DNA of 64,000 nucleotides from Macrostomum lignano (taxonomy: Eukaryota), in the NCBI GenBank assembly GCA_002269645.1, contig NIVC01000173.1:496001-560000 (forward strand), read 5' to 3'. Shown piece by piece: positions 3,211-34,122 of the stretch. Below the pieces are notes generated by a model that worked only from the letters and a program-made list of their open reading frames with translations, searched no databases and was not told where the DNA came from. Position numbers and translations under genes: made by a program. The stretch's first letter is position 1; each line of letters begins with the position of its first letter.

Positions 3211-6200
3211 TCACAACACTTCGCAGTTGCAGCAGCAGCTTTGCGGATAGTTCTCGCAGTACACGGCCCTGTTGTTCACTCCGTAGACGAAGAATTGAAA
3301 TGGTTTCCTACGCCAAACAACGTCGCATTGGAACACGGGCACGCCACGGATCGAGTGACTCTGCAACAGGATGCGACCGGACTGACCCATGATTTGGTGA
3401 TCGCGGATATAGCAGGAGGACATCATGTTTACATCTAGATCTGGGAAGGACTGAATAGGTCTTAGCTGCGGCTGAGTGTCCTCAAGCAGGACCTGCTCAA
3501 GAGAAGGGGTTGATTATTCATCGGTAAATATGCCAACCGAATGCAATGATACACAAAATCACGCAAGCTTTGAAAAAATACAATTACAGCTCTTAAATTT
3601 GATATCCCACAAAAAGAGCTCAAAGGGTTACAAACAAGTCGTCCCAAGACTTCTCGTCCGGGTCACTTTGTCTGATTGGTACTACTTTTAGGTCGTTTCG
3701 TTCAAGAGCCAAGAAACTACGAGCGTATACCCAAAAGGTAGATACAATACAGTCAATACTTCGTCCGATTTCGTTGTTTCTCATTTGTCTCGGGCGAAAC
3801 ACCCGTCAATCTAAGAGTTTTTTATAGAAATTTAGACTTTTGTTTACTGTAATGTAATGCACCCATAACGTGAAACCCCCAGTCATACATCAAAACTCCA
3901 CTTGCGGTCCTATATTTAAGCTTTAAAGTTGAGCGATTTGTATTGAATTATGCGTTGATGCACTGACGAAATAAATTTCTTACGCAAACGAACTGACTTG
4001 GGAGAAAAGTCAGGACGAGATGTCCTGTTCCCTGAACAAACAAGACTATTATCCAACTTACGGTGCCCTCGACGTCGCAAATCAGATGATCGGGTAGAGG
4101 CGTTCGCTCAATGATGAACTCCTTCGCGTGAGTCTCAAATTTAGTTGTCAATCGAACGAAGTACTTCACTTGGCCCGCAGCTTTGCAGGTGGCGCAGGGT
4201 ACGTTGCCGCGGCCGGAACAGATCTTGCAAAGGATTGCGTTCGAGCCGCTGCAGCCGATGCACTTTTGATTTGAGTCTCTGAAGCCCACATTGGTGTCAC
4301 TGCAATGAGAGCATCTGACCTGACCCCAACCCATGCATTTGCAGCACTTGATAATTGCCGTGCCATTGCAGCCGTGACAGATTTTAACAGACGCCGTGTG
4401 CGGTACTTCCGTCTCGACGATGGTATCTTGAAACATGTTCGGCTGCGGGACCTATGCAAAGTCACAAAGACGTTTTTAAAAAACCTTAAGGAGCAAATAG
4501 TAAACATTTTGTCCAGGAATGGGAATGGGGACAATACAATACGTCATTTGATCTATTTTATTACGCATTACGTTTTCGTGCTTAGTTTTTCAGTGCACTT
4601 GTCGCATACATGAGTGGTGAATTTAGTGAGCTCGTTCAACATTGTAAAGCTGCACTTGCTATTCGGTTTACAAGAATTTGTCCCCCGGGGTTCCAGGATT
4701 CGGATTCTGAAGCTCCCAGAATTCTAGACTATGAAGGTGCATCATTAGACACGGAAATTAGGAAATAGACACTAGATGCTGCATCTTTCTTGCCATTGTT
4801 TACATTGGCTCATCTTTCGAAAGGTCTTCGATTCTGCTCCATGATATGCGCGTAAAATGGGGCCGCAGTCCTGAGGGGAGCCAAAACATGTATTTGGTAT
4901 CTGCCTGGTCGGCGCCCCCATCTTTGTCTCTTATGCTGGTGATGCCACGTCCAAGAGGTGGAGAAATTTGAGGATACCTAAAATCAGCGTAGGTTCAATG
5001 AAACGACACCTTTCGCATTACAGTGTGCATCTTCAGGTTTATTTGAACTAACGAGTAGATCGCGAGCGAATAAATATGATATTTATGTTAATTTAATCAA
5101 TAAATTATGTACATCTACACAATCGAAAGACAAGATCTAGGGACGGGCGCTTTGCGTTGAAGCCAACTGCTCTGAATGTGCCGCCAGTGCCCCTTTTAAG
5201 AACATACTTGTTAGTTCAAAAAACCTGAACATGCGTATTTTGTAGTGCGAAACGCGTCGTACGACTTGCCAAGACGACTAACCTTACCGGGAAATTTGAG
5301 CCCTTGTCATTCGTTGAGCTTGTTGACCTTTCTATTTTTTTGAGAAGCAAAATTATTTAGGGCGATTTAAGAGGCCATGCATTCCCCTCTGTCTATGCCA
5401 CTGCCATGTAACTCTTTTTAAGCCGCAACAAAGGTATGTAAGGAGCAGTTGGACACTGGTTAAAAACACTCTAGATTGAAGACTGTTCACTCTAAGTAAA
5501 GAATCTGACCTGAATTCGCCATGGATATGGAGCCTGCCCGTTCATTGATCCATCAATAACCTGGCCTCGGTACGGCTCAAATGCCCAATTAGTCGATCGC
5601 TTCTCAATAAACGTTTTCAACTGGTAGTGAACTGCTGTGGTTTGAAGTAAATTTCTAAATTCCATTTTAAGCGCAGCGTTGGTGCCCCAGCAGCACATTG
5701 ACTTGGCTTGCTGGTACAGCAGGTCCCGGGCTTCTTCTTCAGTAAGCTTGGCGCTTGGCGCGATAGTCTGCGGGGAAGCGACCGGGCTCGAGCTTCGAGG
5801 GCGCGGTGGCGGCGGTATGGAGGTCACGTTCGGCAGCAGGATCTTATCGTAGCCTGAAAGGATTTTTTGTGCAATTCTCTTTTTGTCCCAAAGCAACGAA
5901 TGCTTTCCCGATAAAACTAAAATCACAACAGAATAACACATCCCAATTGCGTTGCCAAAGTGTCCCTGGGTTTGATTCCCCTGCGAGAATTTGGACTTCC
6001 GAATTCCATTTTGGACTTGGCCCTGAGTGAGAGTCTTGACTTTATCTGACTTAGCCGCAAGGCTGTCCCAGAGGGGACACAGCGGGAAGGCCATTCCGCT
6101 AATCCCTGAACGGTCGACACGTTGCTATGAACGAAGAGTTGGCGAAGTGGGAATGTGTTTAAAAAGGCTACGAATGGAGTGCACTGTCTGGCGATGTGAT

Positions 6201-6948
6201 GATATTCACGGCGGATGTACATTCTGTGTGTTTTGCTTCGTCAGTGGGCAAGGTTCAGGGAAATAGGTATTCTTAATTACTAGTCTCAAAGCTAGTTGTA
6301 CCAGTCGACTGCTGACTGTTACGAACAAGGTTAATAAGTTCCGTTTCCTGGAACATCCAATCGACCAATTTGCTAACCCGCAATCTTCTCCATTTTTGCC
6401 AGCGGCACCGCTGCTGGAGCCTCCTCAGCTTCCTGCTGTTGCTGCGTCTTGCCGTTGTCTTTGGGGATCTGGCCGACAGCGCCAACTAACCGGTGACCGA
6501 AGCTTGGCGAGGCCAGTAGAGCTCCCGGTCTAGCAGGTTGTTGCTGGGGAGACCTTCCGGTCGGCATGGGACTGAATGAAGTTTGCAGAACGGCTCCCTG
6601 CTGCTGAGATGACGCTCGTCCAACTGGATTTCCAGTGGGCTCAGCTCGTCCCAGACTCGCACTAGTTAATGTTGAGCCCGATGAAGTTCCGGAGAGTCTT
6701 TGTTGCCCTGCTGCCCGCTGCTGCGAGCCTGCGATTGTAGTTTGGCTGAGGCCGACGGGACTTTGTTGGTCCGATTTCGATGAATCTGAGGTGACTGCAT
6801 CTCCAAAAAGTTGTTGCTGAGATAAGCCTTGCTGCTGCGGTGTATCTCTGTTCCCCATGGTCGACCGCACATTGATCTGCTGGCTCTGGTCATCACTTTT
6901 GAGAGCTGGAGGAAGGCCCTGTGGCCCTCGTTTATTCCCGTGATTCAT
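3211..6948 (-). CDS. SSUH2: SSUH2-like protein, cluster gene 1 (exons 6948-6378, 5853-5510, 4451-4062, 3492-3211)
   Basis: EEEARDLL..KSMCCWG, TFIEKRSTNWAFEPYRG, VPHTASVKICHGC, six CxxC repeats, FFVYG..YPQSCCCNCEVL*. All junctions are GT-AG with phases 1,0,0. Confidence 0.9.
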
Positions 6949-7375
6949 GCTGCATCGATTGAGGCTTGAATTCGCTTACATTTTGCAACACAAAGTCAGA
7001 TCTTGTTTGTTTTTATTTCCCGAATCTACCGAATCATTTTCTTTTTTACTTCCTATATGTGGCAGAAGAATCTATGGCACAAAATCATCACTTAGAAAAA
7101 TTGGATCCGGCATTCTAAAAATACTGATATTACCTTTATTGAGTTTAATAATATTGCATAACGCTAGATAAACCATGATTTGTTTTAGAATTAGAAGTCG
7201 TCGAATGAAAACGGTGTTTTTACGGACAGCAAAGACAGACAGAAAGACTGGACTCCTGTACTCCTAGGTAAACAAAATGAGTTTAAGTGAAATAAGTACT
7301 GTAAGTTGTCAGCGCTTTTTGGAACTTTTTGGAAATCAAGAAAAAGTTACCCTGCTAGTTGCTCAGTTAATGATC

Positions 7376-7654
7376 TCAAAGCAGCTGGCAGCCACAGCAG
7401 CAGGTCTGCGGGTACTCATCATTGTGCACCTTCCTGTTGTCTCCGTACACAAAGAACTGAAACTCTTTGTCTTCCCACTGGCAGTCGCACTGGAACACTG
7501 GCACTCCGCGAATCACGTGATTCTGCATCCAGATCCGACCGGTCTGGGCCAGCCCGCGGTGCTCCTGGACGATTCCAGCCGATTGGCTGTTGACCTGCGG
7601 CTCCGGGAACGACTGGATCGGGTTCAGCAACGGCTGGGTGTCCTCGAACAGAGT
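7376..7654 (-). pseudogene. Orphan duplicated SSUH2-like last exon (intact 279-nt ORF with acceptor; exons 1-3 absent)
   Basis: TLFEDTQPLLNPIQSFP...CCCGCQLL*. Five nucleotide differences from the gene 2 last exon (11781-12059). Flanking homology runs through the intron and stops just past the donor at about 8075. Confidence 0.8.
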
Positions 7655-8396
7655 CTGCATGATGAGGCAGGTTTCAGATAGACAATTGTAACATTTACAA
7701 ATTCGTCACTATTTGTATTTCTGAATTTCTGAATTTTAACAAATTTAAAACTTTTCTACCTCTTTCGAATTTACAGTGGCATTTAGTTACAATGAATTGT
7801 TTTGGAAAGGCAATTTAGATTATTTTTCGTCTAAAGAGTGGTGGTAGCCGTGAATTTTAGAAAACTTGTCTAACAAATAATATATAAAACACGAGCAAAA
7901 TTTACGAAGTATATATAGAGCATAGGTGCGTAAATTTCTAGCGTAATATAAAGGTAAATACTAATTCTTTTTAACGCCAATGCAGTTTTAAGACTTATAT
8001 GGAGTGGTTAATACGAGTACCAAAGGTTTTTGGTAAATTGGTTGTTCGCTATTTATCGAAACACTCACCGTACCCTGTATTTATTTGTCTCCGAGGGGCT
8101 AAATCTCTCTCAAATTTCTGCATTTATGGCTATAAAAATATATACAACCCTCAAATTTATACGTCAAACTAAAAGATTGGGGGATTCCGGGCCTACAACC
8201 CGGAAACCTGCTATATACTCGTAGATGTAGATGTAGATGAGAAGCCTCCATATTCTTCGCCATAGCCAAGTTATATCATGGAGAAGATCACTGCTCGATT
8301 GATTATTTGCTCAGCTCCTCAAGTTAAACCTACCAGCGTATTTGATTTGAATTGCCTAACGATACAAAATGTCAGACGAAAGACGCATCAATCAAT

Positions 8397-11780: not shown

Positions 11781-13891
11781 TCAAAGCAGCTGGCAGCCGC
11801 AGCAGCAGGTCTGTGGGTACTCATCAGTGTGCACCTTCCTGTTGTCTCCGTACACAAAGAACTGAAACTCTTTGTCTTCCCACTGGCAGTCGCACTGGAA
11901 CACTGGCACTCCGCGAATCACGTGATTCTGCATCCAGATCCGACCGGTCTGGGCCAGCCCGCGGTGCTCCTGGACGATTCCAGCCGATTGGCTGTTGACC
12001 TGCGGCTCCGGGAACGACTGGATCGGGTTCAGCAGCGGCTGAGTGTCCTCGAACAGAGTCTGGTGAGACAGGTTTCAGATCTACTTGTAACATTTCGAAT
12101 TTAAAACACAAGTTTTAATTGACTTCGGTTTTGGCTGAAATCCTACAGGAGACTGGATATGCCGACAAAATTTCCGCAAATTTAAAGCTCTTCTATTCTT
12201 TCGACTCTACGGAGCGTATTTATTTTCAAGGAAGTATTTTTGGAAAGGCAAGATTCTTTTTCATCTGTTGTCGTGCATTCTAAAAAACTTCTAAAAAAGG
12301 TGCGTAATTTTGTATTTAGTGCCGAAATAAAAATCTTTTTAACGCTGATGCAGATTTATAACTTATATGGAGCGTTTAATACCTGTGGGGTTTGGTAAAT
12401 TGGTTGCTCAATATCCAGCAAAACACTCACCGTGCCCTCGACGTCTCGAATCAGATGATCCGGTAGAGCCGTTCTCTCCAGGATGAAATCTTTTACGTGA
12501 GTATTAAAAGTAGTCGTCATCTGCACAAAGCACTTCACCTGTCCGGTAGCCTGGCAGGTGGGACAAGTTACACGGCCCCTGCCGTGGCAGTGCAAGCAGC
12601 GGACTCGGCCCTGGCCGTTGCAGGAGGTGCAGCTCCTGCTACCATCGCCCACTCCGTGGTGTCCGGAGTCGTGGCACCAGCTGCATCGGGTGCGGCCCCA
12701 GCCCATACAGTGGTGGCACATGATCATAGTAGATCCACGACAGCCGTGGCAAACCCGCACAGAGGCGGTGTGCGGCACCTCGGTTTGAAGGGTCACGTCG
12801 TGAAACATTTCAGGCGTTTTAATCTGAAAAGAATTTTGGCATTGCAGATTTTTTTAATTTTCAAAGGAGTTACATGATAAATAAGTGGAATTTCTTTAGA
12901 AACTAACATGAATCGCCCAAGGAGACGGGGCTGGCCCATTCTGTGGCCCGTCAATCATTTGACCATGATACGGCTCGGAGGCCCAGTCAGTTGACCTAGT
13001 CTCCAGAAATGTCTTTAGCACGTAGTGCACCGCCGTAGTCTGTTGCAAACCATTGAACTTCATGTTCTGCGCTGCGCCCGTGCCCCAGCAGCACTTGGAT
13101 TCGGCCACAGCGACTAGAAGCTCTCTGGCCTCCTCCTCGGTTAAGTTGGCAGCTGAGGCAATCTGCTCGACTGAAGTGCCGCTGGTGGCTTCTTGGTACG
13201 ACGGTGGCGGCGGTACGAAATTCACATTCGGGGCTAACACTTCGTCATAGCCTGAAATGTATACAAAATGGGAATGAAAACTAAACCTCAGTCGTTGTAA
13301 TCTCGTTGTAACCTCATTAGTTCTTCATTTGGTTATGGAGATTTGAAATGTACGCATAAAGGTCAGTTCATAAATAACTGAAGTAGAAGGACGGCTACAC
13401 TCGATTTTTCTTAGTACTGAGTTGGAGGCCAATAAAAAACGCTTAAAAAATTGGCGCAATGGGGGTTGTTTGGTACACTGACCTGGAATTCTTTCCATAT
13501 CCTGAATCGGCGGAGCTGTAGGCACCGCCTGCTCCGGCGCAGCGCCTTTCCCGCCGTCCATTGGCATCTCGCCTTCTCCGACGGGATAAGGGCCCTTATA
13601 GGGGGCACCTCCCGGTGGCTTGGGCGGCGGTGCACCTCCGTACGATGGTCCAGGCTGTCCGTAGGGTGCTGCCCCAGGCTGTCCGTAGGGTGCTGCCCCA
13701 GGCTGTCCGTAGGGTGCTGCCCCAGGCTGTCCGTAGGGTGCCACCCTAGGCTGTCCGTAGGGTGTTGGTCCAGGCTGGTAGCTCGGCTGTCCAGCGTAAT
13801 ACTGCTGACCCTGTCCGGGTGGCCCCCCATACGGTCCTTGGTAGCCTTGAGATGGCGGCGGATAAGGGTGTGTCTGTCCGCTTGACTTCAT
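11781..13891 (-). CDS. SSUH2: SSUH2-like protein, cluster gene 2 (exons 13891-13483, 13251-12908, 12823-12431, 12059-11781)
   Basis: Same 4-exon layout and phases. PYGQPGAA repeats in exon 1, then PTAP, PPSY, KCCWG, six CxxC repeats, and C-terminal CCCGCQLL*. Confidence 0.92.
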
Positions 13892-16727: not shown

Positions 16728-19143
16728 TCAAAGCAGCTGACATCCGCAGCAGCAGGTCTGCGGGTAGCCATCAGTGTGCAAAGTCCTGTTGTCTCCGTAC
16801 ACGAAGAACTGAAACTCTTTGTCTTTCCACTGACAGTCGCACTGGAACACTGGCACTCCGCGAATCACGTGATTCTGCATCCAGATCCGACCGGTTTTGG
16901 CCAGCACGCGATGCTCCTGGATCAGGCTGGCGGATGCTGCATTGACCTGCTGCTCCGGGCAGGACTGAATCGGATTCAGCAGCGGCTGTGTTTCGTTGAA
17001 TAGAGTCTGCTTGGCGGAGTTTGCGTGATTCAATTGTGACCGGTTGTAAATGGTCCGTCCAGGAGCTAAAACTCTAAGGACCGCCCGTTGGTTGTACAAC
17101 GGGTCTAAATTGGATAGACACGTGATATTCAAGTGCATTTAGGTGGAACTTGATGGGAAACCACGCAATAATACTTCAAAGTAACTGCTGCAAGGTGGCT
17201 AGGGGGTGTGACAGCCGGCCCAGCACTCTTTCGCCTTCTCCAAACTTACTTTCTGGATTCCTAGTCTACCGTAGACTAAACTTCTCAGACGATATCCAGA
17301 GTTATCATCTAACACCACCTAGACTCAAAGGACTGACAAGGAAACCTCCTTTTTGAATCCAGCCTAGATCCGAATATCCCGGTCTAACTCAGAGATCACC
17401 TAAAGACACACGTCAAGATATCGAAATACAACAGTATCGATAAGTAGCCTGTTATGTAAAAGTAGGCTCTCCTTTTCACTGAATTACTTTATACAATTGC
17501 CTTTTTGACATCTGTTTGAAATTGTAATTAATTAAAGAAGCTGTAGAAATAAAACAACCCTGGCAAAACTTCTATCAAGGAATAGGGTTGATTGCTCAGA
17601 CTCATGAGTAACTCACGGCTCCTGGAACGTTCCGAATGAGCTCGTCCGGCAGAGGCGTCTGTTCTAAGATAAAATCCTTCGTGTGAGTCTTGAACATTGT
17701 TGTCAGCTGGACGAAGCACTTTACCTGACCGGCGGCCTCGCACACTGGGCACGGGATGCGACCGTGACCTCGGCAATTGAAGCAGGTTCGCTTCCCGCTG
17801 CCGCCGCAGGAAAGGCATTGCCTGCGGTTGTCGCCAACTCCTTTCACACCCTTTCCCCTGCAGCTATTGCAACGAGTTCGACCAAAGCCTCCACAGCGCA
17901 AGCACATGACAAAGGTCGCGCCCATGCAGTAGTGGCAGGTCCGCACGCTGGCTGTGTGCGGCACCTCACACTGCATCCGGGCGTCGCGAAACATCTCTGG
18001 TTGCTGCACCTAAACGGGGTCCAGAAATGTTGCGAAAGCTCCTATAGGTTTTGCAGAATAGGAAACTACAGGACGTACTACTTTAATCAGTAGGTTTAAA
18101 CTATAGCAGCGTCTTTACGAGCGTATGACGCACCAAAAGCCTGTAGGAGACACCGCCAGCAACCCATGAGGTCAGCTAGCAAGCGAAGGTTAACTACATT
18201 TATGAATTTACACGAAGGTACACTTTTCTTACTGTAGCTAACACTAGCTTGTAAATACGATAGTATACACAGAATACAAAAGAAAAGTAAAAATTGCAAC
18301 TGAACTTTGACCCACATGAATATCCCACGGCGCAGGTGCTTGTCCGTTCTGCGGACCATCGACCGGCTGACCCTTGAAGGGCACCGAGGCCCACTCGGTT
18401 GACCTAGTCTCTACGAAAGTCCTCAGAACGTAGTGCACAGCCGTGCTCTTCTGCAGACTGCTGATTGTCATACCCTCGGCGGCGCCCTTGCCCCAGCAGC
18501 ACTTGGACTTCGCTTCTGCCACTAGAAGCGCCCGAGCCTCGTCTTCAGTGAGGCTTTTGTTCGAAATCCACCTATCTACGCTTGCACCCTGGGTGGCCTC
18601 CTGATACGATGGAGGCGGAGGCGTCACATGAGTCACGTTGGGCTTTACGATTTCCTCGTATCCTGTTGGGAGCAAGCGGTGTCATTATGGTGTCCGCAGA
18701 AATTTTCTACGAAAGTGCTGCTGTCTTAAAGCGCTAATACGAGTACAAAGCGCTAACAGACTTCATCGCTTATAAAATATTATCGTCATTAAGGGATCTT
18801 TTCAGTACTTATTTCCCCTTCAAACACTGGCGTCGATATACGAATTTAACATTAACGATGAAGACAGTTTGCTCTGGTGACAAATTTTCTCTGCTGACAT
18901 ATAGCGGTGGAGACAGTAGCGGTGATTTCATAAGCTCCAAACTTCACAAGATCGAAATTTATAAAAGATTGAAAAATCTTCCAAGCAAACCCACTCAGCA
19001 TTTAACTTATTACCTTTGATTCGCTCCATCTCCTGTATCGGCGGCGCGGAAGGATCTGCCATCTGCTGTGATGAGTCATCGAATGGCATTTCCCCTTCTC
19101 CTTGGGCGGCGGGCTGTACCTGAGACGGCTTGCTAGGCTGCAT
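16728..19143 (-). CDS. SSUH2: SSUH2-like protein, cluster gene 3 (exons 19143-19014, 18662-18316, 18009-17617, 17006-16728)
   Basis: Same layout, with PSAP, PPSY, KSKCCWG, CxxC repeats and CCCGCQLL*. The start ATG at 19143 is uncertain. Confidence 0.9.
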
Positions 19144-22403: not shown

Positions 22404-24172
22404 TTACAGCAGCTCGCATCCGCAGCAGCAGGTCTGTGGGTAATTCTCGATGTACACCTTCTTGTTGTCTCCGTACACGAAGTACTGGAACTGCTTGTCC
22501 TTCCACTGACAGTCGCACTGGAACACTGGCACTCCGCGAATCACGTGATTCTGCATCCAGATCCGACCGGTCTGGGCCAGCCCGCGGTGCTCCTGGATGA
22601 TGCTGGCAGACTGCTCATTGACCTCCTGTTCGGGGAACGACTGGATCGGGTTCAGCAGCGGCTGAGTGTCCTCGAACAGAGTCTGTATTTTTGAGAAAAA
22701 ATATTAACGGAAATTCGTTTATCCATAGCAGCATATGATTTAGAGTCAATGCTAGCTCGTACTGGCACACTGGATCAGCATTTACTCACTGCGCCTGTAA
22801 CATCTTTAATCAGATAATTCGGCAGTGCAGTCCTTTCCAGGATGAAATCGCGGACGTTCGTCTTAAAATTGACCGTCAGCTGGACGAAGCACTTCACCTG
22901 GCCGGTGGCCTCGCAGACCGGACACGGGACGCGACCGTTGCCACGACAGGGCATGCACCGACGCTTCCCAGAGCCGTGACACATGATGCAGCGTTTGCGA
23001 TTCTCGCCGAGTCCTTTTTCCCCAGAGCCGCGGCAGCTGAAGCAGCGGGTTTTGCCCCAGCCCCGGCAGCGCATGCACACCAGCAGCATCTGGCCGTGGC
23101 AAAAGTGGCACACTCGAACGGTGGCCGTGTGCGGAACCTCGCTGCGAAGGGTTCCATCGTGGAACATTGGTGGCATCTCAACCTGGTTGACAAAATTCCA
23201 TTAGATTGTAGCTTTAAGCTTGATCACAATTATAGATAGATGCAACCACTTGCCTAATGGCTGTGGCTGCTTGCAGATGCGACAACAAGTTTGTTGACTG
23301 TTTGTTTTGACCCTCACTCACCTGAATCTCCCATGGAGCCGGTGCCTGGCCATTCTGCGGCCCGTCAACCATTTGACCTCGGAACGGCTCCGAGGTCCAG
23401 TCGGTTGACCTAGTCTCTAGAAAAGTTTTCAATGCGTAATGCACAGCCGTGCTTGACTGTAAACTATTGAAGCTCATACTCTCTGCTGCGCCCTGGCCCC
23501 AGCAGCATTTTGACTTGGCAACGCCGATGAGCAAGTCTCTGGCCTCCTCCTCGGTGAGCTTTGTAGCTGAATCGACTTTTTCGATAGACTCTCCACTGGT
23601 TGCTTCTTGATATGAGGGCGGCGGCGGTACGAATGTAACGCTAGGGGCCAGGAGATTGTCATAGCCTGCGATCGATTGATTTTACCGATCGGTTGACGTT
23701 TAGCGGGTCCTTTAAACATAAAAGTCTTGACTATTTCATCAACTTATAAGTCCCTACGTCTACGTGCAATCAAATTACAATGCACGAGCCTATCATCATA
23801 AGGGTGAAGCTTCGATCGGATGAAGGATTAAAATCTGGACCTTGAATTTGCTAAATTGAAGCTTGCTGTTCTTTTTAGTACAACTTTGTAGAGCTCTCCA
23901 GCTTATAGCTCGTATTTTACTACTTTTGGATCTCGAGTGCACCAGCAATCCGCATTCTCACCTTTGATCTTCTCCATCTCTTGAATGGGCGGCCCAGTAG
24001 CCTGAGCAGCTGGATTAGTAGCCGGATTCTCCTCTCCGTCATCGAAGGGCATTTCGCCTTCGCCAACTAAGTTCTCGTTGTACTCTTGACCGCCTGGAGG
24101 GGCGGTTGCAGCAGCTGATGAGCCATAATATGGATTAGGCGCCACTTGGTTTTGTCCAACGTTGGTAGACAT
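22404..24172 (-). CDS. SSUH2: SSUH2-like protein, cluster gene 4 (exons 24172-23962, 23665-23322, 23182-22790, 22682-22404)
   Basis: Same layout and phases, with GEGEMPFD, PPSY, KSKCCWG, CxxC repeats and CCCGCELL*. Confidence 0.92.
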
Positions 24173-25550: not shown

Positions 25551-26353
25551 CCGAGCAACATCCGTGAATTTACAGAAATTGATGTTCTCATTCAAAAGCA
25601 TTTTTTATACTGGAGAGCTCGTGATTGTCTTTTGTATGCTCAAACAATCGGGAAAGAAAAAAGGTTTCCTTATATCTCTGTGTTATTTGGTTTATTTGTG
25701 TGCATTGTAAGTACGCATTGAGAATGGAGAGTTCTCAGGAATAAAGAACTTTATAGCTTATGGAATAGCAAAGTTATATATACCGTACGAAGGCATTAGC
25801 TGAAACCCCTCGAAAACATGAAAAGAAGGCTTCACAGTGCAATATCTGATAGAACGTCAACGATATAGATAGAATGCGCAATAGAACATTTGTGAATAAT
25901 ATTTTTAAAAGTTTGCTAGAAAAAAACGATAGCACAGAATCAATAGCTTTACAACAGCATAAAAATGATATTTTGATTTTGAGAAGCATTGAAAACCGGC
26001 ACCCCAGACAACATTGCGCCTGATTAACAGTCGGAAAACCTTGCGTCATCTGACTTTCTAATCATCCGGCATGTACACTCTCTGTGCTAGCTGGGGGTTG
26101 GCCCTCATAGTTGTGAATCCTACGTCAGACGCTCTGTCAGTTTTCATGCAGAAGCCTCAATTTAAATGAAAGTCAGACGCATTTCTCGCTGCCTCAACAC
26201 GCGCTGGAAAATAGGCATAAATTACTAGCTTAACGTAAAACGTTTGCATTGCAAGTTAATTGTAATATATATATCAGGTTTTTAAACAAGGCGAATTAAA
26301 TGTTCCTAGCAACTAAGCATTTGATTTAAAAAGCAGAATGAATAAAATATTCA

Positions 26354-28726
26354 TCACAGCAGCTCGCATCCGCAGCAGCAGGTCTGTGGGTAATTCTCAA
26401 TGTACACCTTCCTGTCGTCTCCATACACGAAGTACTGGAACTGCTTGTCCTTCCACTGGCAGTCGCACTGGAACACTGGCACTCCGCGAATCACGTGATT
26501 CTGCATCCAGATCCGACCGGTTTGAGCCAGCGCCCGGTGTTCTTGGATGATACTGGCAGACTGCTCATTGACCTGCGGCTCCGGGAACGACTGGATCGGG
26601 CTCAGCTGCGGCTGAGTGTCCTCAAAAAGTACCTGTAGTTTTAATTATACGAGCGTTTAATAAAATTGTATTTAGAACAAAATCGATCACATGCGCGTCT
26701 ACCCTTAAAGTGGCCACACACCGTTCCCTGCACGCCTCGAATGAGATGATCCGGCAGTGGCGTTCTCTCCAAAATAAAATCCCTGATGTTCGTCTTGTAG
26801 ACGATGGTCATCTGCACGAAGCATTTCACCTGGCCTGTGGCTTCGCAGGTGGGGCAGTGGATTCGGCCCTGACCGCGGCAGTGAAAGCAGCTCCTCCTGC
26901 CGGAGCCGTGGCAGAAGCTGCACGCGCTGCGTTCTTCACCGATGCTCCGTTGACCGGAGCCGTGGCAGCTGCTGCAGCGTGTCCGGCCCCAGCCCATGCA
27001 GCGCAGACAGGTGATCAGTCTGCTGCCGCCGCAGCCGTGACAGGTTCGCACTGACGCCGTGTGCGGCACTTCGCATTTCAGAGTGACATCCTTGAACAGC
27101 TCCGGTTTGGCTAGCTGGAATGTTGGATCAGGTGAAAAGATACGTCAGTAGATAAGTCCTTTCGGTTACTGACGCTTGTATACTCGGATGCTGCATATGG
27201 ACGGATGCTGCATATCTATTTTTATATTGTCTCTTCTCGACTCGCTTGGCGTCAAATTTAATGTAATCACAGTAGAGCTACCAAGGAAGATTCTCTCTAC
27301 AATTGTTTCTGCTGTGTTGGATTGGAGAGACGCAGGCACACGAAATTCAAGAAAACGGATCAAATTTTTGTTTTGAGCACCTTCTCAATTAATAATTACA
27401 GTCGCTAGCCCTCCAGATCGTCGAGATATCCAACAATTCTGTTAGAATGTCGAATTTATCTCATAAACACTAGTGTATTCAATACACCCATGTGCGTCAA
27501 TCAGTACGATCATCGTCACCTTCTGGAACTTCAACAGGTGGCATCATGGGACTAAAGGCACCCTGTTGGGAATTTCTCTGATTTCGGTAATCAAGCGCGA
27601 CATTGGGCAAGTCTCAACTACAAATTATCTTCAAATTATCTTTCAAGCAATCAGTCATCATCCTGACGGCGTCGACGCCTTCAACAAGGGGGGCACCGAG
27701 TGACTTCTGTTTGTTCTATGGGTAGAAAAATGGCTTGGCATTCCTACTGTTAAGTACATTCCAGTTAGACCACTATAAGCTCAGTAGCGGTTGCACTTGC
27801 ATGCAGTGCTGATGCTGTGAAGGGTAGCCATTTTTTAAGCTGTATGGGAACTCTGAACCTTCATGAACCTTCTAAACCTGCTGATGTTTTACCTGGATTT
27901 CCCAAGGAGCCGGAGGAGCCCCGTTAATTGGCCCGTCTATTGTTTGACCGGGGTGGTATGCCTCCGATGCCCAGTCTGTTGAACGCGTCTCGACGAACGT
28001 CTTTAGCATGTAGTGCACAGCCGTGCTGGCCTGCAGGTTTTTAAATATTAACTCCCTTGCCGCGCCCTTGCCCCAGCAGAGCTTCGAGTCGGCCAAGGCT
28101 ATCAGAGCGTCGCGCGCTTCCGTCTCGCTGATCTTCGCGGTTGGCGCAATCTCCTCCAACGAGTGACTGCTCGTTGCCTGCTGGTAGGACGGCGGCGGCG
28201 CAACGAAGTTCACGCTTGGCGACAGGATTTCGTCGTATCCTGCCGGCGGTGGCGCGATTCAAGTTGCATGGGAAATCAAAATAAAATTGGTTAAGAATAT
28301 GAAGCTGGATTGTTTTAATCACCTTGGATTTTTTCCATATCCTGAATTGGCGGTGCAGTAGCTGGCAAAAGGAGCTTTTTCGTCGCCTCCACTATCAAGT
28401 GGCATCTCACCTACACCAACGGGTTCACCTCCAGCCTGCGATGGACCACCGTACGGTCCCGGTTGGTCCAGGTGTAGCTCCGTACGGTCCCGGTTGTCCA
28501 GGTGGAGCTCCGTATACGGTCCCGGTTGTCCAGGTGGAACTCCGGACCCGGTTGTCCACGGTCCCGGTTGTCCAGGTGGAGCTCCATACGGTCCCGGTTG
28601 TCCAGGTGGAGCTCCATACGGACTCGGTTGTCCAGGTGGAGCTCCGTACGGACCCGGTTGTCCAGGTGGAGCTCCGTACGGTCCAAGTGGTGCACCGTAC
28701 TGCGGATTCTGATGCTGCGGCTGCAT
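26354..28726 (-). CDS. SSUH2: SSUH2-like protein, cluster gene 5; exon 1 frameshifted as assembled (exons 28726-28323, 28239-27893, 27114-26722, 26632-26354)
   Basis: Exons 2-4 are intact and end CCCGCELL*. Exon 1 holds 30-nt PYGAPPGQPG repeats and is 404 nt (3n+2), whereas all paralogues are 3n+1. Confidence 0.75.
27330..27510. repeat. Interspersed repeat of unknown class, copy 2 (in gene 5 intron 2)
   Basis: Aligns with 14975-15150. Confidence 0.65.
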
Positions 28727-29532
28727 ATGATTTTTGGTATTGAACTTATACAGTCGAACACCTTAATTTTTTTCAGTATATAGTGTTTCTGGTAGAACTA
28801 GTAAACCGTTCTCTCTCCAATGATCCGTTTTTATGTTTAAACTTAATACTGTTTTATATTTGCCTCTGTCCTTTCCTCTCCTTGGCCAAACGCCTCCCTG
28901 TCTCTCCTGTCTCTCTCCCAGATCAAGCTGTACACTGTGACTCCTCTCCCTCCCTCTTTCTCCCTCGATCCTCTTGGTATTTCAGCGGACATACATGCGA
29001 TATTGCTTTCCTCTCCCCTAAAGCTGATGCACACTACTTCAGAATAGAAGACGGCTTTATGTCAGGCATGTCCCTAGGCAAAGTAAATGAACAAAAATTA
29101 TAGTATTCTTTGCGACGGCACGGCAGTCTGCACCAGACCGGCCCAACGATTGTGCCTGCACTCATCCGAACTGCCTAGACTGCTCGAGCTACAGGACGAG
29201 AGCTATCATCAGTAATATACTGAATATACGAGGCTAGTACTATTAAATTAAGGCCAAGTGAATGTCAAGTCAGGCCTTCTGTTGCCGCAATTTTCAGAGC
29301 AGTAATGGGCAATATGGATCCCTGCGGTGGAGCCCCCTTTCGGGCTGATCCGCGGTAAGCCCCTGGCTTTCCTACCCCGTTTAAGAAGAAGAATGGACAA
29401 TATGGAACTGTAGAAATCCAGCTGGGAAAGTTCCAAACTAGTTGTTAATTTGCTGAATGACTATGGAATTCTAATGGGTATGATAGCACACCCACATGGG
29501 TATGATCATATGGATATGATCATGGGTATGAT

Positions 29533-30150
29533 AGCACCAGAGGCGCCAGCACCAGAGGCGCCAGCACCAGAGGCGCCAGCACCAGAGGCGCCAGCACCAG
29601 AGGCGCCAGCACCAGAGGCGCCAGCACCAGAGGCGCCAGCACCAGAGGCGCCAGCACCAGAGGCGCCAGCACCAGAGGCGCCAGCACCAGAGGCGCCAGC
29701 ACCAGAGGCGCCAGCACCAGAGGCGCCAGCACCAGAGGCGCCAGCACCAGAGGCGCCAGCACCAGAGGCGCCAGCACCAGAGGCGCCAGCACCAGAGGCG
29801 CCAGCACCAGAGGCGCCAGCACCAGAGGCGCCAGCACCAGAGGCGCCAGCACCAGAGGCGCCAGCACCAGAGGCGCCAGCACCAGAGGCGCCAGCACCAG
29901 AGGCGCCAGCACCAGAGGCGCCAGCACCAGAGGCGCCAGCACCAGAGGCGCCAGCACCAGAGGCGCCAGCACCAGAGGCGCCAGCACCAGAGGCGCCAGC
30001 ACCAGAGGCGCCAGCATTAGAGGCGCCAGCATTAGAGGCGCCAGCATTAGAGGCGCCAGCACCGGAGGCGTCAGCACCAGAGGCGCCAGCATTAGAGGCG
30101 CCAGCATTAGAGGCGCCAGCATTAGAGGCGCCAGCATTAGAGGCGCCAGC
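29533..30150. repeat. 15-bp minisatellite (agcaccagaggcgcc), about 41 copies
   Basis: Near-perfect tandem unit, with agcattag variants at the 3' end. Confidence 0.97.
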
Positions 30151-30431
30151 CTAAAGATTGCAGAAGAAAAGCATAAAACAAGACGGCCCTCTGCTTCAGG
30201 CTCGCTATCGAGGCGCTAAATGTACTTGAAACTGTAAAAAGATAAATGGTTGTATTATTTATTCATACAGTGCACGCATTCGTACACACATACAATGATT
30301 TCCAAGCCATATCACAGTTACACGATTCAAAAGCCGATATTTACAAAACTCCTTCGATAAAAAAGAGTACGAAATCTATTCGTAGCAGAAAAGTCAGCTA
30401 TAAATGTGTAATGACTCTTGCACGTCTCAAC

Positions 30432-33400
30432 TCAAAGCAGCTGGCAGCCACAGCAGCATCTCTGCGGGTACTCGTCCGCGTAAACTTTCCGGTTTTCTCC
30501 ATACACAAAGTACTGGAACTGCTTGTCCTTCCACTGGCAGTCGCACTGGAACACTGGCACTCCGCGAATCACGTGATTCTGCATCCAGATCCGACCGGTT
30601 TGGGACAGGGCCCGGTGCTCTTGGATGATGCCGGCAGACTGCTCATTGACCTCCGGCTCGGGGAACGACTGGATCGGGTTCAGCAGCGGTTGAGTGTCCT
30701 CGAATAGGATCTGAAGTTTACAAAGTTTACACAAAAGTTCATCTGCAATAGACTGACTTCACCGTTATCCAATTTTTTAGATTTTAGCCTTGCTCAGCGG
30801 TAAACGGGTCCGACTATCTCACCACGACCCCTGGTTCGATTCCGTACACGTCCGCATTGTTTTGGGACAATTTTGGACAAGTTCCAGGACGGTCAAACTA
30901 TTCACACTCATGAGGGCCAACTCCTACAGCAGAGAGTTTACGATTTGACGGTTGGAAAGTCAGGGCCGCTGTACACCCTGTCTGAGCGTGCGTCCCAGCG
31001 TACAGTATTGGCGCGCTTGTATGTGCCAAGGAGTCCGCGGAGCGGGCAGAAATGCCTCAGCACTGATTGCGGGACGATGTCACCGAAGGCAAGGTTCACG
31101 GGGGGATTGCTAAAATGCCGTGGCTCCTGGGGGGAGAATGGCTTAAAGGGTGCTGATATTTTAGGCTAGACAGCTGGCCAAACTTCCCAAATCCCAAAGT
31201 TCTCCAAAATCCCAGACTTCCCATTTCAGGGTTGATGTTTGTTTTTTTGCACGAGCGTAAAAACTTTTGATCCTAAGAGGAATTTTTATTCTTTGTTGCC
31301 TCCCCAATGGGGTGGGGAGAAGATTGTTATTCAGCAACAAAGACTATACAAGAAGTTGTAGTCAGGTTTTGATAATAATAATAATTAATAATAATTGACT
31401 ACACCTGCCCCAAACAACAGCTCAGCCGCAGCTATTGCGCGGCGCATCTGAAGGCTGCGTACGGCTGTTCAGTCCAAGGACTGGGGGTCGCCATACACCC
31501 TCAATTATCCCAGCTATTACTGGGAGCCATTTTACAGCTGGGTGAACTGAAGCAATGCAGAGTTAAGTGTTTTGCTCAAGGACACAAACTGTTCCGAGTG
31601 GAATATCGGGAAACGAACCCTCAACCGTGAGTCCGACGCTCTAACCACTAGGCTACAACCTCCTTTGAACAATTGTCAGTTGTAGGGGAGAAGCATTAAC
31701 GAAATGATAAATTTAACCTTTTGATGGTTGTGAAATGGTCTTATTGTGAAATGATTCTCAGTGAGGATCATTTGGCTTTAATTTTCAGTCAATTTGTCGG
31801 CTAACAAAATTGCAGCATGCGCAGTGAACTGTCGTAGACTCTGTTTGCGGAGGCCTCTCCACACAGCGACAAACCTCTCTTACCAGTCCGGAGACCTCGC
31901 GAATCAGCTGATTTGGCAGCAGCGTTCTCTCCAGAATGAAATCTTTCGCCCGAGTCTTGAAAGTGACAGTTAACTTGACGAAATATTTCACCTGCCCGGC
32001 GGCCTCACAGACAGTACAGGTGGTCCGACCTCTACCGTGGCAGCGTTCGCAAATTCGCTGCCCGTTGCCGTCGCACACGTAGCAGATCCGTCTGGGCTCG
32101 TCGTGGTGAAATCCCCGCGTCGCCCCGGTGCTGTTGCAGGAGTAGCAGCGGTGACGGCCCAGGCCGCTGCAGCTGGAGCAGAGGACGCTGCCGCAGCCGT
32201 GGCACCGGTGACAGACGCGCACAGACGCGGTGTGAGGCACCTCAACGTTGATGACAGTGTCGCGAAACATTTCCGGCGTGCGGACCTGTCGATTTAGAAG
32301 TTGCAAAGGACTGGGGTCAGACAACTAGATAGATCTCACAAAAAAGCTCAGTGCTTGGACTCAAGAGGTAGTCTATCGCTATTGCTTCTAAAGTTTCCCA
32401 GGATGGCAGGAACGAAAAATGCATCTTTATAGATTAAGACTTCATCTGTAGGCTGTCACTAGGATAAGGTCGCTAGTTGATGTGCATTTTTTTCGTTGAT
32501 TTTGGATGTTCCGATGATAACTATGGCCAAATCCCGTCTCGAATTATCTCGAGATCCGGTCCCATCCCGTCCCGTACCGTCCCGTCCCGTTCCGTCCTGT
32601 CCCGACTCCAAAAAGTTTGTCCTGTCCGAGCAGACAGCTACAGCTGCCTGACGACACGGTCGATTGTGCGTCTCCTTTGACAGAATATAGCGTAAAAGTG
32701 ATTCTCAAAGCTCGCAAAGCTTCATATTGCAAAGGAGTAATTTTTTTCGGAATTAAAACCTTTTTGAACTTCCTACTGGTAAGCATTACATAGAGCACTT
32801 GGGTTTGATCTTCACTCACCAGTTGAATTTTTTACGTCTTGAAATCTTTAAATTTTTACTTCTTATCGTAGTGAACCTATATTTATGCGATAGGTAAAGT
32901 CAAACTTAAAAGGACGTTGTTACATTTATTAACACCTAGCTGCCTTCACCCTATTAAAACCTATGAAAGTAGCACACAGGAATTTTATATACGAGCGTAT
33001 TAATAACCGACCTCAATATCCCAGGGCGGCGGCGGGACGCCATTTTGCGGTCCATCAATAATCTGGCCTCGGAACGGTTCCGACGCCCAGTCCGTTGCTC
33101 GCGTCTCTAAAAATGTCTTTACCATGTAGTGCACAGCTGTAGTCTGAGTTAGGCTCTTGATGAGCATATCCTCAGCTGCTCGCTTACTCCAGCAGCATTT
33201 CGACTTGGCCAAACCAATTAATAATTGCCTGGCCTCCATTTCTGTGAGACTGCTGCCGGAGAGAAAGTTCTCAACTGTACTGGTGGCCAGGTTGCTGATT
33301 GCTTCTTGGTAGGAGGGCGGCGGGGCCACGTAGGCTACGTGGGGTTGTAGGATTTCGTCGTAGCCTGTAAATGGTCGTTTGATGGGACGAGATTTGACGG

Positions 33401-34122
33401 CGACGTGCATCTGGATAATACATTTTCTGTCATGCCCTAAAAAGGCGTTGCCCTTGTCTAGCGCCCCGAGAAGAAATTATGGTCAGTTTACCATAAATCT
33501 CATTAGCAATGGATCAGCAACTTACAGTAATTTAGCACAAAAACAAAACGAATATACAAGATGTGTGTCAAGCCAAGTTTAAAAAGGACATTTTGTTGAC
33601 TAGCAACTTATTTAATATGAATATATTTTGTTAAGTTGAATATATTTTACACGTAAGCGTCCTCTAAAACCAAGGGTTATCCTAAGTAGGCAGTCAGTTA
33701 ATAATAGTCTACATGTAACTAGCTACCTGTAAGATCTGTACATGTTTCCAAAGTTAAAGCTCACCAGAGATTTTCTCCATCTCGTTGTAAGGTGGAGCAC
33801 TGGGTGTTGGTGGCTCTTCCGGCGGCAATTCGCAATTAATCGCACTGATGGTACTCGCCGACTCAAACCAGTAATCTGAGCTATTATGAGCTCGAATTTG
33901 GTCGCGCAAATTCTGTTGCTGCCGCTGCTGCTGCGGTGGTGGCGGCGGCGGGGGCGGCGGCGGCGGCTGTGGCGGCAACTGCATGCCGTGCTGCTGACCG
34001 TTGTTACTCCACCGACCGCTATGTGGCTGCATCGGAATGGGCTGGTACTGACCGTAGGTACTCGGTTGAATGTTTTCATAACCCGGCGGCTGCACCAGAG
34101 GACGATTTTGATCAGTGGACAT
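30432..34122 (-). CDS. SSUH2: SSUH2-like protein, cluster gene 6 (exons 34122-33765, 33364-33012, 32285-31884, 30710-30432)
   Basis: Same layout, with poly-Pro/Gln exon 1, PSAPPY, PPSY, KSKCCWS, CxxC repeats and CCCGCQLL*. Confidence 0.92.
30786..31000 (+). mobile_element. tRNA-derived SINE family B
   Basis: Box A/B-like tgctcagcggt...ggttcgattcc. The tail gaaagtcagggccgctgtacaccctg recurs at about 47705-47750 and 63483-63535. Confidence 0.5.
31375..31656 (-). mobile_element. tRNA-derived SINE family A, copy 2 (gene 6 intron 3)
   Basis: The minus strand starts gtagcctagtggttagagcgtcggac...ggttcg (Pol III box A/B), has a core gtgtccttgagcaaaacacttaac, and ends in a (tta)n tail. Confidence 0.8.

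What the first reader, a model, noticed from the sequence alone, without database searches (positions are those of the whole stretch)
3211..34122. Six-gene tandem expansion of SSUH2-like genes with an invariant 4-exon architecture
Seen: six same-strand paralogues with identical intron phases (1,0,0). Exon 2 is 344-353 nt, exon 3 is 390-402 nt and exon 4 is 279-282 nt. All keep KCCW, six CxxC(xGxG) DnaJ-like zinc motifs and a Cys-rich C-terminus. Established: SSUH2/C3orf32 is poorly characterised. Inference: at least five intact copies with diverging N-termini point to a lineage-specific expanded family, possibly specialised by tissue or challenge.
Basis: partly seen in the sequence, partly recalled or inferred. 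Interest (0 to 1): 0.7.

Follow-up and report, generated by a model that had tools for sequence, protein, structure and literature searches.

The report
Flatworm SSUH2 tandem gene array
The window holds a real, old tandem array of six SSUH2-family zinc-finger genes from the flatworm Macrostomum lignano that is already in public databases, and its one unreported feature is that the last exon alone has been kept nearly identical among five of the genes.

Summary

The window is Macrostomum lignano contig NIVC01000173.1:496001-560000. Three of my hand-built proteins equal GenBank PAA88855-57 residue for residue. UniProt already names fused models of the array "Protein SSUH2 homolog". A second contig carries the same gene order, so the array is not an assembly artefact.

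The six copies form one clade (100% bootstrap) against other phyla. The duplications are old: synonymous sites are saturated in exons 2-3, and dN/dS is 0.1-0.35. Saccoglossus has its own tandem pair, and several other animals carry species-specific paralogue clades.

Corrections:
- KCCW holds in four genes only.
- Exon 1 of gene F is frameshifted here but intact in the other contig.
- A seventh, orphan exon 4 lies at 7376-7654.

New here: exon 4 of five genes and the orphan shows about half the synonymous divergence and shares a 62-nt identical block. This points to exon-limited gene conversion.

Family-wide motifs (P[ST]AP, PPxY, DnaJ-type zinc finger, C-terminal CaaX box) suggest a lipid-anchored adaptor or chaperone. 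That function is inferred, not shown.

This is an ordinary paralogue array of modest interest.

The parts
3211..6948 (-). Gene A (528 aa), the most divergent paralogue. Exons are 6948-6378, 5853-5510, 4451-4062 and 3492-3211. It has a Q/S-rich N-terminus, MCCW in place of KCCW, no P[ST]AP and no PPxY, and it ends in CCCNCEVL.
   Evidence: Splice model. The protein equals GenBank PAA88855.1 exactly. Its exon 4 is not homogenised with the others (dS 1.2-2.0).
7326..7696 (-). Orphan exon-4 copy 'B'. Coding sequence plus stop is 7654-7376, with an AG acceptor. It lies inside a tract of about 370 bp that is 92-95% identical to exon 4 of gene C. There are no exons 1-3 upstream.
   Evidence: tblastn gives 98.9% amino-acid identity to exon 4 of C, and dS is 0.07. 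Relics of intron 3 further upstream are only 76-77% identical. In the second array copy a 17-nt insertion breaks its C-terminus.
11781..13891 (-). Gene C (474 aa). Exons are 13891-13483, 13251-12908, 12823-12431 and 12059-11781. The N-terminus carries PYGQPGAA repeats. It has PTAP, PPSY and KCCW and ends in CCCGCQLL.
   Evidence: Equals GenBank PAA88856.1 exactly. The 24-nt repeat in exon 1 is shown.
16728..19143 (-). Gene D (382 aa). Exons are 19143-19014, 18662-18316, 18009-17617 and 17006-16728. It has a short N-terminus with PSAP and PPSY.
   Evidence: Equals GenBank PAA88857.1 exactly. AlphaFold2 model has pLDDT 90 and pTM 0.80.
22404..24172 (-). Gene E (408 aa). Exons are 24172-23962, 23665-23322, 23182-22790 and 22682-22404. 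PPSY is kept and P[ST]AP is lost. It ends in CCCGCELL. No gene was called over its exons 1-2 in the part of the contig I fetched.
   Evidence: The exact protein is not in the collection. No called gene in L002 over window 23000-24172.
26354..28726 (-). Gene F. Exons 2-4 are 28239-27893, 27114-26722 and 26632-26354. Exon 1 (about 28726-28323, PYGAPPGQPG repeats) has frameshifts in this contig. It carries KLCW.
   Evidence: Exon 1 is in frame in the second array copy L003, which has a different frameshift in exon 2. dN/dS against the other copies is 0.10-0.20 in exon 2.
30432..34122 (-). Gene G (463 aa). Exons are 34122-33765, 33364-33012, 32285-31884 and 30710-30432. It has a polyP/polyQ N-terminus with PSAP and PPSY.
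   Evidence: GenBank annotates only exons 1-2 with read-through into intron 2 (P0061, 240 aa).
11887..11948 (-). A 62-nt block of exon 4 that is identical in C, D, E, F, G and the orphan B. The other copies are at 7482-7543, 16834-16895, 22510-22571, 26460-26521 and 30538-30599. It encodes TGRIWMQNHVIRGVPVFQCDC.
   Evidence: Six exact matches against 0 expected. Synonymous codon differences fall to 0.04-0.06 here, against about 0.5 in exons 2-3.

Best explanation
This is an old DNA-level tandem array of six paralogous SSUH2-family genes, plus one solitary relic of the last exon, in Macrostomum lignano.

Origin (inferred). A compact four-exon ancestral gene was duplicated repeatedly, probably by unequal crossing-over. 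All copies inherited the same intron positions and phases.

Selection (shown). The copies have since diverged to saturation at silent sites, while the proteins stayed under purifying selection.

Exon 4 (inferred from sequence patterns). The last exon of five genes and the relic has been repeatedly homogenised by short-tract gene conversion. The most divergent gene, A, has escaped this.

Protein architecture. The motifs, the zinc-finger match and the structure prediction are shown here; that they act as binding or lipidation sites is inferred. The architecture is shared across the animal family:
- a disordered proline-rich N-terminal tail (exon 1), followed by P[ST]AP and PPxY short motifs;
- a conserved beta-rich core with no solved relative;
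- a DnaJ/BSD2-type cysteine-rich zinc finger with six CxxC pairs, which would fit up to three zinc sites (inferred);
- a C-terminus CCCxC-x-x-L that reads as a CaaX geranylgeranylation box preceded by palmitoylatable cysteines.

Most likely mechanism (inferred, not shown). The proteins are cytosolic, lipid-anchored, zinc-finger chaperone or adaptor proteins. Their tails recruit WW-domain (Nedd4-type) ligases and ESCRT-I. The paralogues differ mainly in the tail and in which motifs they keep, and share a homogenised anchor end.
For: Identity and reality of the array:
- The window is 100% identical over 21,123 bp to NIVC01000173.1 of assembly GCA_002269645.1.
- A second contig, NIVC01000120.1, carries G-F-E-D-C-B-A in the same order at 97-99% identity.
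- A third contig carries another copy of gene A.
- Models A, C and D equal GenBank proteins. That annotation was derived from RNA-seq transcript assemblies (PMC5730564).

Family:
- Full-length hits to SSUH2 homologues reach E = 1e-114.

Age and selection:
- pS is 0.61-0.81 in exons 2-3, and dN/dS is 0.10-0.35.
- The six copies are monophyletic with 100% bootstrap.

Gene conversion:
- At identical amino acids, codons differ in 55% (exon 2) and 48% (exon 3) of comparisons but only 22% in exon 4 among C-G. Gene A against the others shows 46% in exon 4.
- Codons invariant across all five genes number 34 of 59 columns in exon 4, against 16 of 100 in exons 2-3 (Fisher p = 1e-7).
- A 62-nt block is identical in six copies.
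- Similarity stops at the exon edges, apart from short flanks shared by B and C.
- B against C is 95-98% identical in the exon but 76-77% in the intron relics.
- GC3 is highest in exon 4 of C-G, at 0.71-0.84.
- Exon 4 RNA shows no unusual folding (z = +0.25).

Protein:
- The AlphaFold2 model has pLDDT 90 and pTM 0.80.
- Only the zinc finger matches solved structures: BSD2 6ekb, and the DnaJ cysteine-rich domain 1exk at E = 1e-5 with the family profile.
- A C-x-x-[LIVMF] end is present in 107 of 115 homologues.
- Of 72 homologues in which the anchor motif could be located, 43 have P[ST]AP just upstream of it and 56 have PPxY just downstream, from sponge to hemichordate.
Against: - No RNA-seq could be mapped here. 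Expression of E and F is unsupported: E has no called gene over the fetched part of its span, F has none at all, and neither has a transcript-derived GenBank model in that stretch.
- F has frameshifts in both array copies, at different places. This could be PacBio error or decay.
- Low synonymous divergence in exon 4 could in principle reflect selection on the nucleotide sequence rather than conversion.
- Lipidation and motif binding are read from sequence only.
- Human SSUH2/fls485 was reported as diffusely cytoplasmic with no visible membrane co-localisation (PMC2838759). A review cites nuclear localisation (PMC7818184).
- The one mammalian and one coelacanth homologue I read lack the P[ST]AP and PPxY motifs.
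- Pfam gives no hit above threshold for these proteins.
Confidence: 0.8

Rival explanations
1. The low synonymous divergence of exon 4 comes from selection on the nucleotide sequence itself, not from gene conversion. Candidates are a splicing enhancer, a small-RNA target, an mRNA structure or strong codon preference.
For: Similarity among D, E, F and G ends exactly at the exon borders. The 62-nt block encodes a run of amino acids that is also invariant. GC3 is high in exon 4.
Against: Gene A encodes much of the same peptide with different codons: 13 of 27 codons that are invariant in C-G differ in A. The orphan exon B shares the block and is 95-98% identical to C, while its intron relics are 76-77% identical. 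In the other array copy B carries a frame-breaking 17-nt insertion, so it is not protected by coding selection. Exon 4 RNA folds no better than shuffles (z = +0.25). Rfam finds nothing. Antisense ORFs are absent over exon 4 of D and F.
Confidence: 0.2
2. The array is an assembly artefact, with haplotypes or homeologous copies of one or two genes stacked in tandem by the assembler of this redundant, neopolyploid genome.
For: Mlig_3_7 is a PacBio/Canu assembly with 180 Mb of duplicated blocks at 95% identity or more (PMC5730564). Indels differ between the two contigs.
Against: Neighbouring units are only 47-73% identical in protein across exons 2-3, with saturated silent sites and unrelated introns and intergenic DNA. 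Haplotypes in this assembly differ by 1-3%. An independent contig shows the same seven units in the same order. The older ML2-based UniProt model of 2850 aa contains six units.
Confidence: 0.02
3. Most units are dead copies, with only one or two working genes in a pseudogene array.
For: E has no called gene over the fetched part of its span and F has none at all. G has only a partial model. Exon 1 of F is frameshifted here. The orphan exon B is a relic.
Against: Five units have complete open reading frames with canonical splice sites. dN/dS is 0.10-0.35 for every pair including E and F. All twelve zinc-finger cysteines and the C-terminal box are invariant. A, C and D coincide exactly with transcript-derived models. 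Exon 1 of F is intact in the other array copy.
Confidence: 0.1
4. The units are parts of one long transcription unit. This could be an operon-like precursor resolved by trans-splicing, or a single giant multi-domain protein as in the fused UniProt models.
For: All units are on the same strand. M. lignano has polycistronic precursors, and about 7% of its transcripts have several trans-splice sites (PMC5730564). UniProt holds fused 1400-2850 aa models.
Against: Each unit has its own ATG and stop codon. The spacers are 1.7-4.8 kb and hold minisatellites and reverse-transcriptase relics. The RNA-seq-based annotation cuts A, C and D into separate genes that equal my models.
Confidence: 0.1

Closest known systems
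SSUH2 family (human SSUH2/C3orf32/fls485; named after C. elegans ssu-2)
   Same: Homology runs the full length, with E down to 1e-114 and 33-46% identity. Shared features are the CC[YW]G motif, EVPHTA followed by six CxxC pairs, FxVYG, and a CCCxC-x-x-L end.
   Different: There are six tandem copies with only four exons each. The motif reads W for Y (CCW) and TAVHY for SAFHY. The exon-4 peptide is strongly lineage-specific. The vertebrate members I read lack the proline-rich tail and its motifs. In humans the gene is single-copy and linked to dentin dysplasia type I (PMC7818184).
Duplicated SSUH2 genes in other animals (Saccoglossus kowalevskii, Mya arenaria, Solemya velum, Ptychodera flava)
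   Same: Several paralogues share one contig or chromosome, and each species' copies group together in the tree. In Saccoglossus two are same-strand neighbours 4.5 kb apart.
   Different: The Saccoglossus gene spans 14 kb with at least seven coding exons. Adjacency was checked only in Saccoglossus. Nothing is known about exon-limited homogenisation in these species.
DnaJ/Hsp40 cysteine-rich (CR) zinc-finger domain and BSD2
   Same: The CxxCxGxG repeats match. The family profile hits E. coli DnaJ CR (1exk, E = 1e-5), BSD2 and DNAJA3. Foldseek matches BSD2 6ekb with TM 0.72 over 61 columns.
   Different: No Pfam family, J domain included, reaches E <= 1. There are six CxxC pairs rather than four. 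The rest of the 340-residue core has no solved relative.
LITAF/SIMPLE and ARRDC1 (a functional analogy recalled from memory, not tested)
   Same: These proteins also combine an N-terminal proline-rich region carrying both P[ST]AP and PPxY with a membrane-associated domain that, in LITAF, binds zinc. They link Nedd4-type ligases and TSG101 to endosomal sorting or budding.
   Different: No sequence or fold relationship was found. Membrane attachment here would be through a lipidated C-terminus, not a hydrophobic hairpin or an arrestin fold.
Concerted evolution of tandem gene families by short-tract gene conversion
   Same: A mosaic in which one segment is homogenised among neighbours while the rest is saturated, with raised GC3 and a pseudo-exon taking part.
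   Different: The tract is confined to a single 279-bp exon in five of six genes. Direction and timing are unknown.

Membership tests
SSUH2 family | Significant homology over the whole conserved core to proteins named SSUH2 homolog, vertebrate ones included | tested here: met
   Gene E as a single query gave E = 1.5e-108 to Lytechinus at 97% coverage. The profile of the six genes gave E = 1e-114 to 1e-60 for about 90 proteins, with Latimeria at 5e-79 and Thomomys at 8e-67.
SSUH2 family | Signature motifs: CC[YW]G, xAxHY, EVPHTA, six CxxC pairs, FxVYG, and YPxxCCCxCxxL at the C-terminus | tested here: met
   These are invariant or nearly invariant columns in the alignments of six and of 80 sequences. 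The exceptions are MCCW in A and KLCW in F.
SSUH2 family | A curated family model (Pfam or NCBIfam) | tested here: inconclusive
   No Pfam family passes its threshold. The best hits are sub-threshold zinc-finger models (GRXCR1-2_C, BSD2_CRD, zf-AtTam37). Nothing in the Pfam scan corresponds to this family, so the test cannot decide.
DnaJ/Hsp40 co-chaperones | A J domain with an HPD motif | tested here: not met
   In the Pfam scan of A, C, D and G at E <= 1 no J-domain model appears.
DnaJ/Hsp40 co-chaperones | A cysteine-rich CxxCxGxG zinc-finger domain | tested here: met
   Four full CxxCxGxG repeats plus two CxxC pairs are present in D, E and F. The family profile matches 1exk at E = 1.1e-5. 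The fold matches BSD2. Zinc binding itself was not tested.
CaaX-prenylated proteins | Cysteine at the fourth position from the C-terminus, with L as the last residue for geranylgeranylation | tested here: met
   The ends are CQLL (C, D, G), CELL (E, F) and CEVL (A). 107 of 115 homologues end in C-x-x-[LIVMF], most often CTIL.
CaaX-prenylated proteins | Actual lipid modification and membrane association | not testable with these tools
   No paper in the library links SSUH2 to prenylation. Human fls485 was reported as cytoplasmic without visible membrane co-localisation.
ESCRT/Nedd4 adaptors with late-domain-type motifs | P[ST]AP and PPxY motifs in a disordered region | tested here: met
   C has PTAP and PPSY. 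D and G have PSAP and PPSY. E and F have PPSY only, and A has neither. The positions are conserved in the homologues (43 and 56 of 72). The region has low to medium pLDDT.
ESCRT/Nedd4 adaptors with late-domain-type motifs | Binding to the TSG101 UEV domain or Nedd4 WW domains | not testable with these tools
   None of the 10 top-ranked papers listed for SSUH2 combined with these partners mentioned SSUH2.

The most novel reading that the evidence does not exclude
SSUH2 proteins are ancestrally lipid-anchored adaptors. Geranylgeranyl and palmitoyl groups on the CCCxC-aaL end would hold them at a membrane. P[ST]AP and PPxY motifs next to a zinc-finger client-binding core would couple cargo to ESCRT-I and Nedd4-type ligases, in the manner of LITAF or ARRDC1. 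On this reading the flatworm array is a set of adaptors with different tails and motif complements: both motifs in C, D and G, PPxY only in E and F, and neither in A. The common membrane-anchor exon would be kept uniform by gene conversion, with the orphan exon taking part. This would also give a mechanistic link between SSUH2 and VPS4B, two of the three dentin dysplasia type I genes.
Probability: 0.2. Interest if true: 0.6.

Novelty: new member of a known kind. Interest (0 to 1): 0.3.

Why it matters
SSUH2 is a conserved animal gene and a human disease gene (dentin dysplasia type I), and it has no established molecular function.

The locus adds little in itself. It is a paralogue array that is already deposited and partly annotated.

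It does offer two usable things:
- **A case of exon-limited concerted evolution.** One 279-bp exon is homogenised among five genes and a pseudo-exon, while the rest of each gene is saturated. Macrostomum lignano is a transgenic model animal, so this can be studied experimentally.
- **A testable hypothesis for the family.** The conserved features are P[ST]AP, PPxY, a DnaJ-type zinc finger and a CaaX box. Together they suggest a lipid-anchored adaptor or chaperone. I found no paper in the searched library that proposes this.

The annotation can also be improved. G is truncated in GenBank, no gene is called over E and F in the stretch I fetched, and the UniProt models fuse up to six genes.

Tried and rejected
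- **Pfam scan of four paralogues.** No family passed threshold.
- **Rfam scan of the whole window.** No match.
- **Foldseek of the confident AlphaFold2 model against the PDB.** Only the zinc finger matches (BSD2). The long-strand core gave only low-probability hits to pore-forming toxins, secretins and capsids, which I treat as noise.
- **Two protein database searches.** Neither returned a homologue from another flatworm, so the age of the expansion within flatworms could not be bracketed.
- **Exact look-ups of my E and G proteins.** Neither is in the collection.
- **Antisense ORFs of 89-153 aa over exon 4 of A, B, C, E and G.** I considered these as a reason for nucleotide conservation and rejected them. 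They are absent over D and F and follow from codon composition.
- **RNA structure in exon 4.** Rejected (z = +0.25).
- **Relics of exons 1-3 upstream of the orphan exon B.** tblastn finds none; only intron-3 relics remain.
- **The first guess that the window was a fish genome.** Dropped once the best hits proved to be Macrostomum lignano.
- **The neighbouring ESCRT-III (Snf7) gene and the NYN-RNase gene.** I noted them, but adjacency alone is no evidence of a functional link.

Full report
**What is in the sequence**

Motif scans and six-frame reading showed repeated coding blocks on the minus strand between 3.2 and 34.1 kb. I fixed the splice junctions by reading the sequence around each block.

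Six units (A, C, D, E, F, G) each have four coding exons. Every intron is GT..AG, and the phases are 1,0,0 in all six. Exon 2 is 344-353 nt, exon 3 is 390-402 nt and exon 4 is 279-282 nt.

Four details need correcting:
- KCCW occurs in four genes only. A has MCCW and F has KLCW.
- Exon 1 of F is out of frame in this contig.
- A seventh, solitary exon 4 ('B', 7654-7376) has an intact acceptor and stop.
- All genes lie on the minus strand.

tblastn finds no further copy in the window.

**Where the window comes from**

The best protein hit was a Macrostomum lignano protein. The window is 100% identical over 21,123 bp to contig NIVC01000173.1 of assembly GCA_002269645.1 (Mlig_3_7). The offsets place it at 496001-560000 of that contig.

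My hand-built proteins A, C and D are identical to GenBank PAA88855.1, PAA88856.1 and PAA88857.1. That annotation was produced from RNA-seq-based transcript assemblies (PMC5730564). These three are therefore transcript-supported.

G is annotated only as a 240-aa fragment that reads into intron 2. In the part of the contig I fetched (window 23000-44122), no gene is called over F or over exons 1-2 of E.

UniProt also holds older fused models called "Protein SSUH2 homolog", 1400-2850 aa long. One of them contains six units. So the array is already in public databases. I found no paper in the searched library that discusses it.

**Not an artefact**

A second contig, NIVC01000120.1 (73.9 kb), carries G-F-E-D-C-B-A in the same order at 97-99% identity. 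A third contig carries another copy of gene A. This fits the known redundancy of this neopolyploid genome.

Neighbouring units within the array are only 47-73% identical in protein across exons 2-3, and their introns and spacers are unrelated. They cannot be stacked haplotypes.

The two contigs differ by scattered indels. Exon 1 of F is in frame in the other contig, while that contig has its own frameshifts in exon 2 of F and in G. Sequencing error is as likely as decay.

**Age, selection and phylogeny**

Between all paralogues, synonymous sites in exons 2 and 3 are saturated (pS 0.61-0.81). dN/dS is 0.10-0.35 wherever dS could be estimated. The duplications are therefore ancient, and the proteins have stayed under purifying selection.

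In neighbour-joining trees with 38 homologues from other phyla, the six copies form one clade with 100% bootstrap. A is the sister of the other five.

Saccoglossus, Mya, Solemya and Ptychodera each show paralogue clades of their own on a single contig or chromosome. In Saccoglossus, two same-strand genes lie 4.5 kb apart. Independent duplication seems to be a habit of this family.

The Saccoglossus gene has at least seven coding exons over 14 kb. The four-exon structure is therefore a derived, compact state that predates the flatworm duplications and was simply inherited.

No homologue from another flatworm was retrievable. A polyclad larval atlas mentions "ssuh2-2" as a marker of gut-related cells.

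Exon 4 behaves differently from the rest of each gene.

- Among C, D, E, F, G and the orphan B, pS is 0.25-0.49, except 0.07 for the B-C pair.
- At identical amino acids, codons differ in 22% of comparisons in exon 4, against 55% in exon 2 and 48% in exon 3. The figure falls to 4-6% in the middle of exon 4.
- Codons invariant across all five genes make up 34 of 59 columns in exon 4, against 16 of 100 in exons 2-3 (p = 1e-7).
- A 62-nt block is identical in all six copies.
- Gene A encodes a related peptide with ordinary, saturated codon differences (46%).
- Similarity stops at the exon edges. Only B and C also share short flanks.
- B and C are 95-98% identical across the exon, but the relics of intron 3 next to B are only 76-77% identical to C.
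- In the second array copy, B carries a 17-nt insertion that destroys its C-terminus. It is therefore not held by coding selection.
- GC3 is highest in exon 4.
- The exon folds no better than shuffled sequence.

Together these observations favour repeated short-tract gene conversion confined to exon 4. I estimate about 0.75 for conversion against 0.2 for nucleotide-level constraint.

**What the proteins look like**

Exon 1 encodes unrelated low-complexity tails:
- PYGQPGAA repeats in C;
- PYGAPPGQPG repeats in F;
- polyP and polyQ in G;
- a Q/S-rich tail in A;
- short tails in D and E.

The end of exon 1 and the start of exon 2 carry a conserved stretch, P[ST]AP-P-x3-M-[DE]-x3-G-Y, followed within about 20 residues by PPxY. 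Both motifs sit at the same positions in homologues from sponge to hemichordate. Of 72 homologues in which the stretch could be located, 43 have P[ST]AP and 56 have PPxY. In this array C, D and G keep both motifs, E and F keep PPxY only, and A keeps neither.

An AlphaFold2 model of D built on 80 homologues is confident (pLDDT 90, pTM 0.80). It shows a disordered N-terminus, a core of long beta-strands with two helices, and a zinc-finger module.

Only the zinc finger has solved relatives. These are BSD2 by fold and the DnaJ cysteine-rich domain by profile (E = 1e-5). No J domain appears in the Pfam scan.

The C-terminus CCCGCQLL / CELL / CEVL is a CaaX box with a geranylgeranyl-type last residue, preceded by cysteines. 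107 of 115 homologues end this way.

**How it most likely works**

- Shown: the array, its splice structure, its age, purifying selection, the exon-4 mosaic, the motifs and the zinc-finger fold.
- Inferred: the proteins are cytosolic, bind zinc through six CxxC pairs, and attach to membranes through a lipidated C-terminus. Their tails would engage WW-domain ligases and ESCRT-I. This arrangement is reminiscent of LITAF and ARRDC1, an analogy from memory that I did not test. The paralogues would then differ in tail and motif complement while sharing a homogenised anchor.

Evidence against the inferred part is real. Human fls485 was seen as diffusely cytoplasmic (PMC2838759). A review cites nuclear localisation (PMC7818184). 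The vertebrate homologues I read lack the tail motifs. I put this mechanism at about 0.2-0.35.

**Comparison and novelty**

Membership of the SSUH2 family is met on every feature I could test. Membership of DnaJ/Hsp40 is not met, because there is no J domain.

The family is known but poorly characterised. It is described as a putative chaperone (PMC2838759) and as a dentin dysplasia type I gene alongside VPS4B and SMOC2 (PMC7818184).

This locus is a new, partly annotated member set of a known family, and paralogue arrays are commonplace. The exon-limited homogenisation and the motif architecture are modestly interesting and can be tested.

**Verdict**

The locus is an ordinary paralogue array with one noteworthy evolutionary feature. 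Interest is 0.3.

Noticed in passing
window 36948-38026 (-): Two exons of a Snf7-family ESCRT-III gene (CHMP2-like) lie 2.8 kb beyond the ATG of gene G. Pfam Snf7 scores are E = 7e-24 and 1e-9. Adjacency to genes that carry ESCRT-type motifs may be coincidence.
   Followed up: partly
window ~48023-52039 (+): A gene with a Zc3h12a-type NYN ribonuclease domain split over two exons (Pfam E = 1e-12 and 3e-16). It has polyQ stretches, and 22-nt and 39-nt minisatellites lie inside or next to it.
   Followed up: partly
window 1934-2209 (+): The last exon of an otopetrin-family gene (Pfam Otopetrin, E = 5e-18), just outside the array.
   Followed up: partly
window 20247-20585 (-) and 34920-35177 (+): Short reverse-transcriptase relics, both below the Pfam RVT_1 cut-off (E = 6e-6 and 1e-3). 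One lies in the spacer between genes E and D and the other just beyond gene G. They look like decayed retroelements.
   Followed up: partly
window 24653-25548, 29533-30150, 53349-54779 and others: The window is dense in minisatellites. Examples are a 34-nt unit x26 between E and F, a 15-nt unit x41 between F and G, and a 31-nt unit x46 further on. Some produce long spurious ORFs on both strands.
   Followed up: no
L001 16260-16640 (second array copy, NIVC01000120.1): The orphan exon 4 carries a 17-nt insertion that shifts the frame before the CCCGCQLL end. Its acceptor region matches gene C rather than the window's copy of B.
   Followed up: yes
L003 (NIVC01000120.1:1-13048) against window 24608-36066: The second contig differs from the window by many small indels: 27 gaps in 4.8 kb and 74 gaps in 4.7 kb. 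These break F exon 2 and G exons 1 and 3 there, while repairing F exon 1. This pattern suggests residual long-read errors in one or both contigs.
   Followed up: partly
window 7277-7681, 11775-12104, 22368-22694, 30246-30707 (+): Open reading frames of 108-153 aa run antisense to exon 4 of B, C, E and G and share a conserved peptide. They are absent over D and F, so they are most likely a by-product of the conserved, GC3-rich sense codons.
   Followed up: partly
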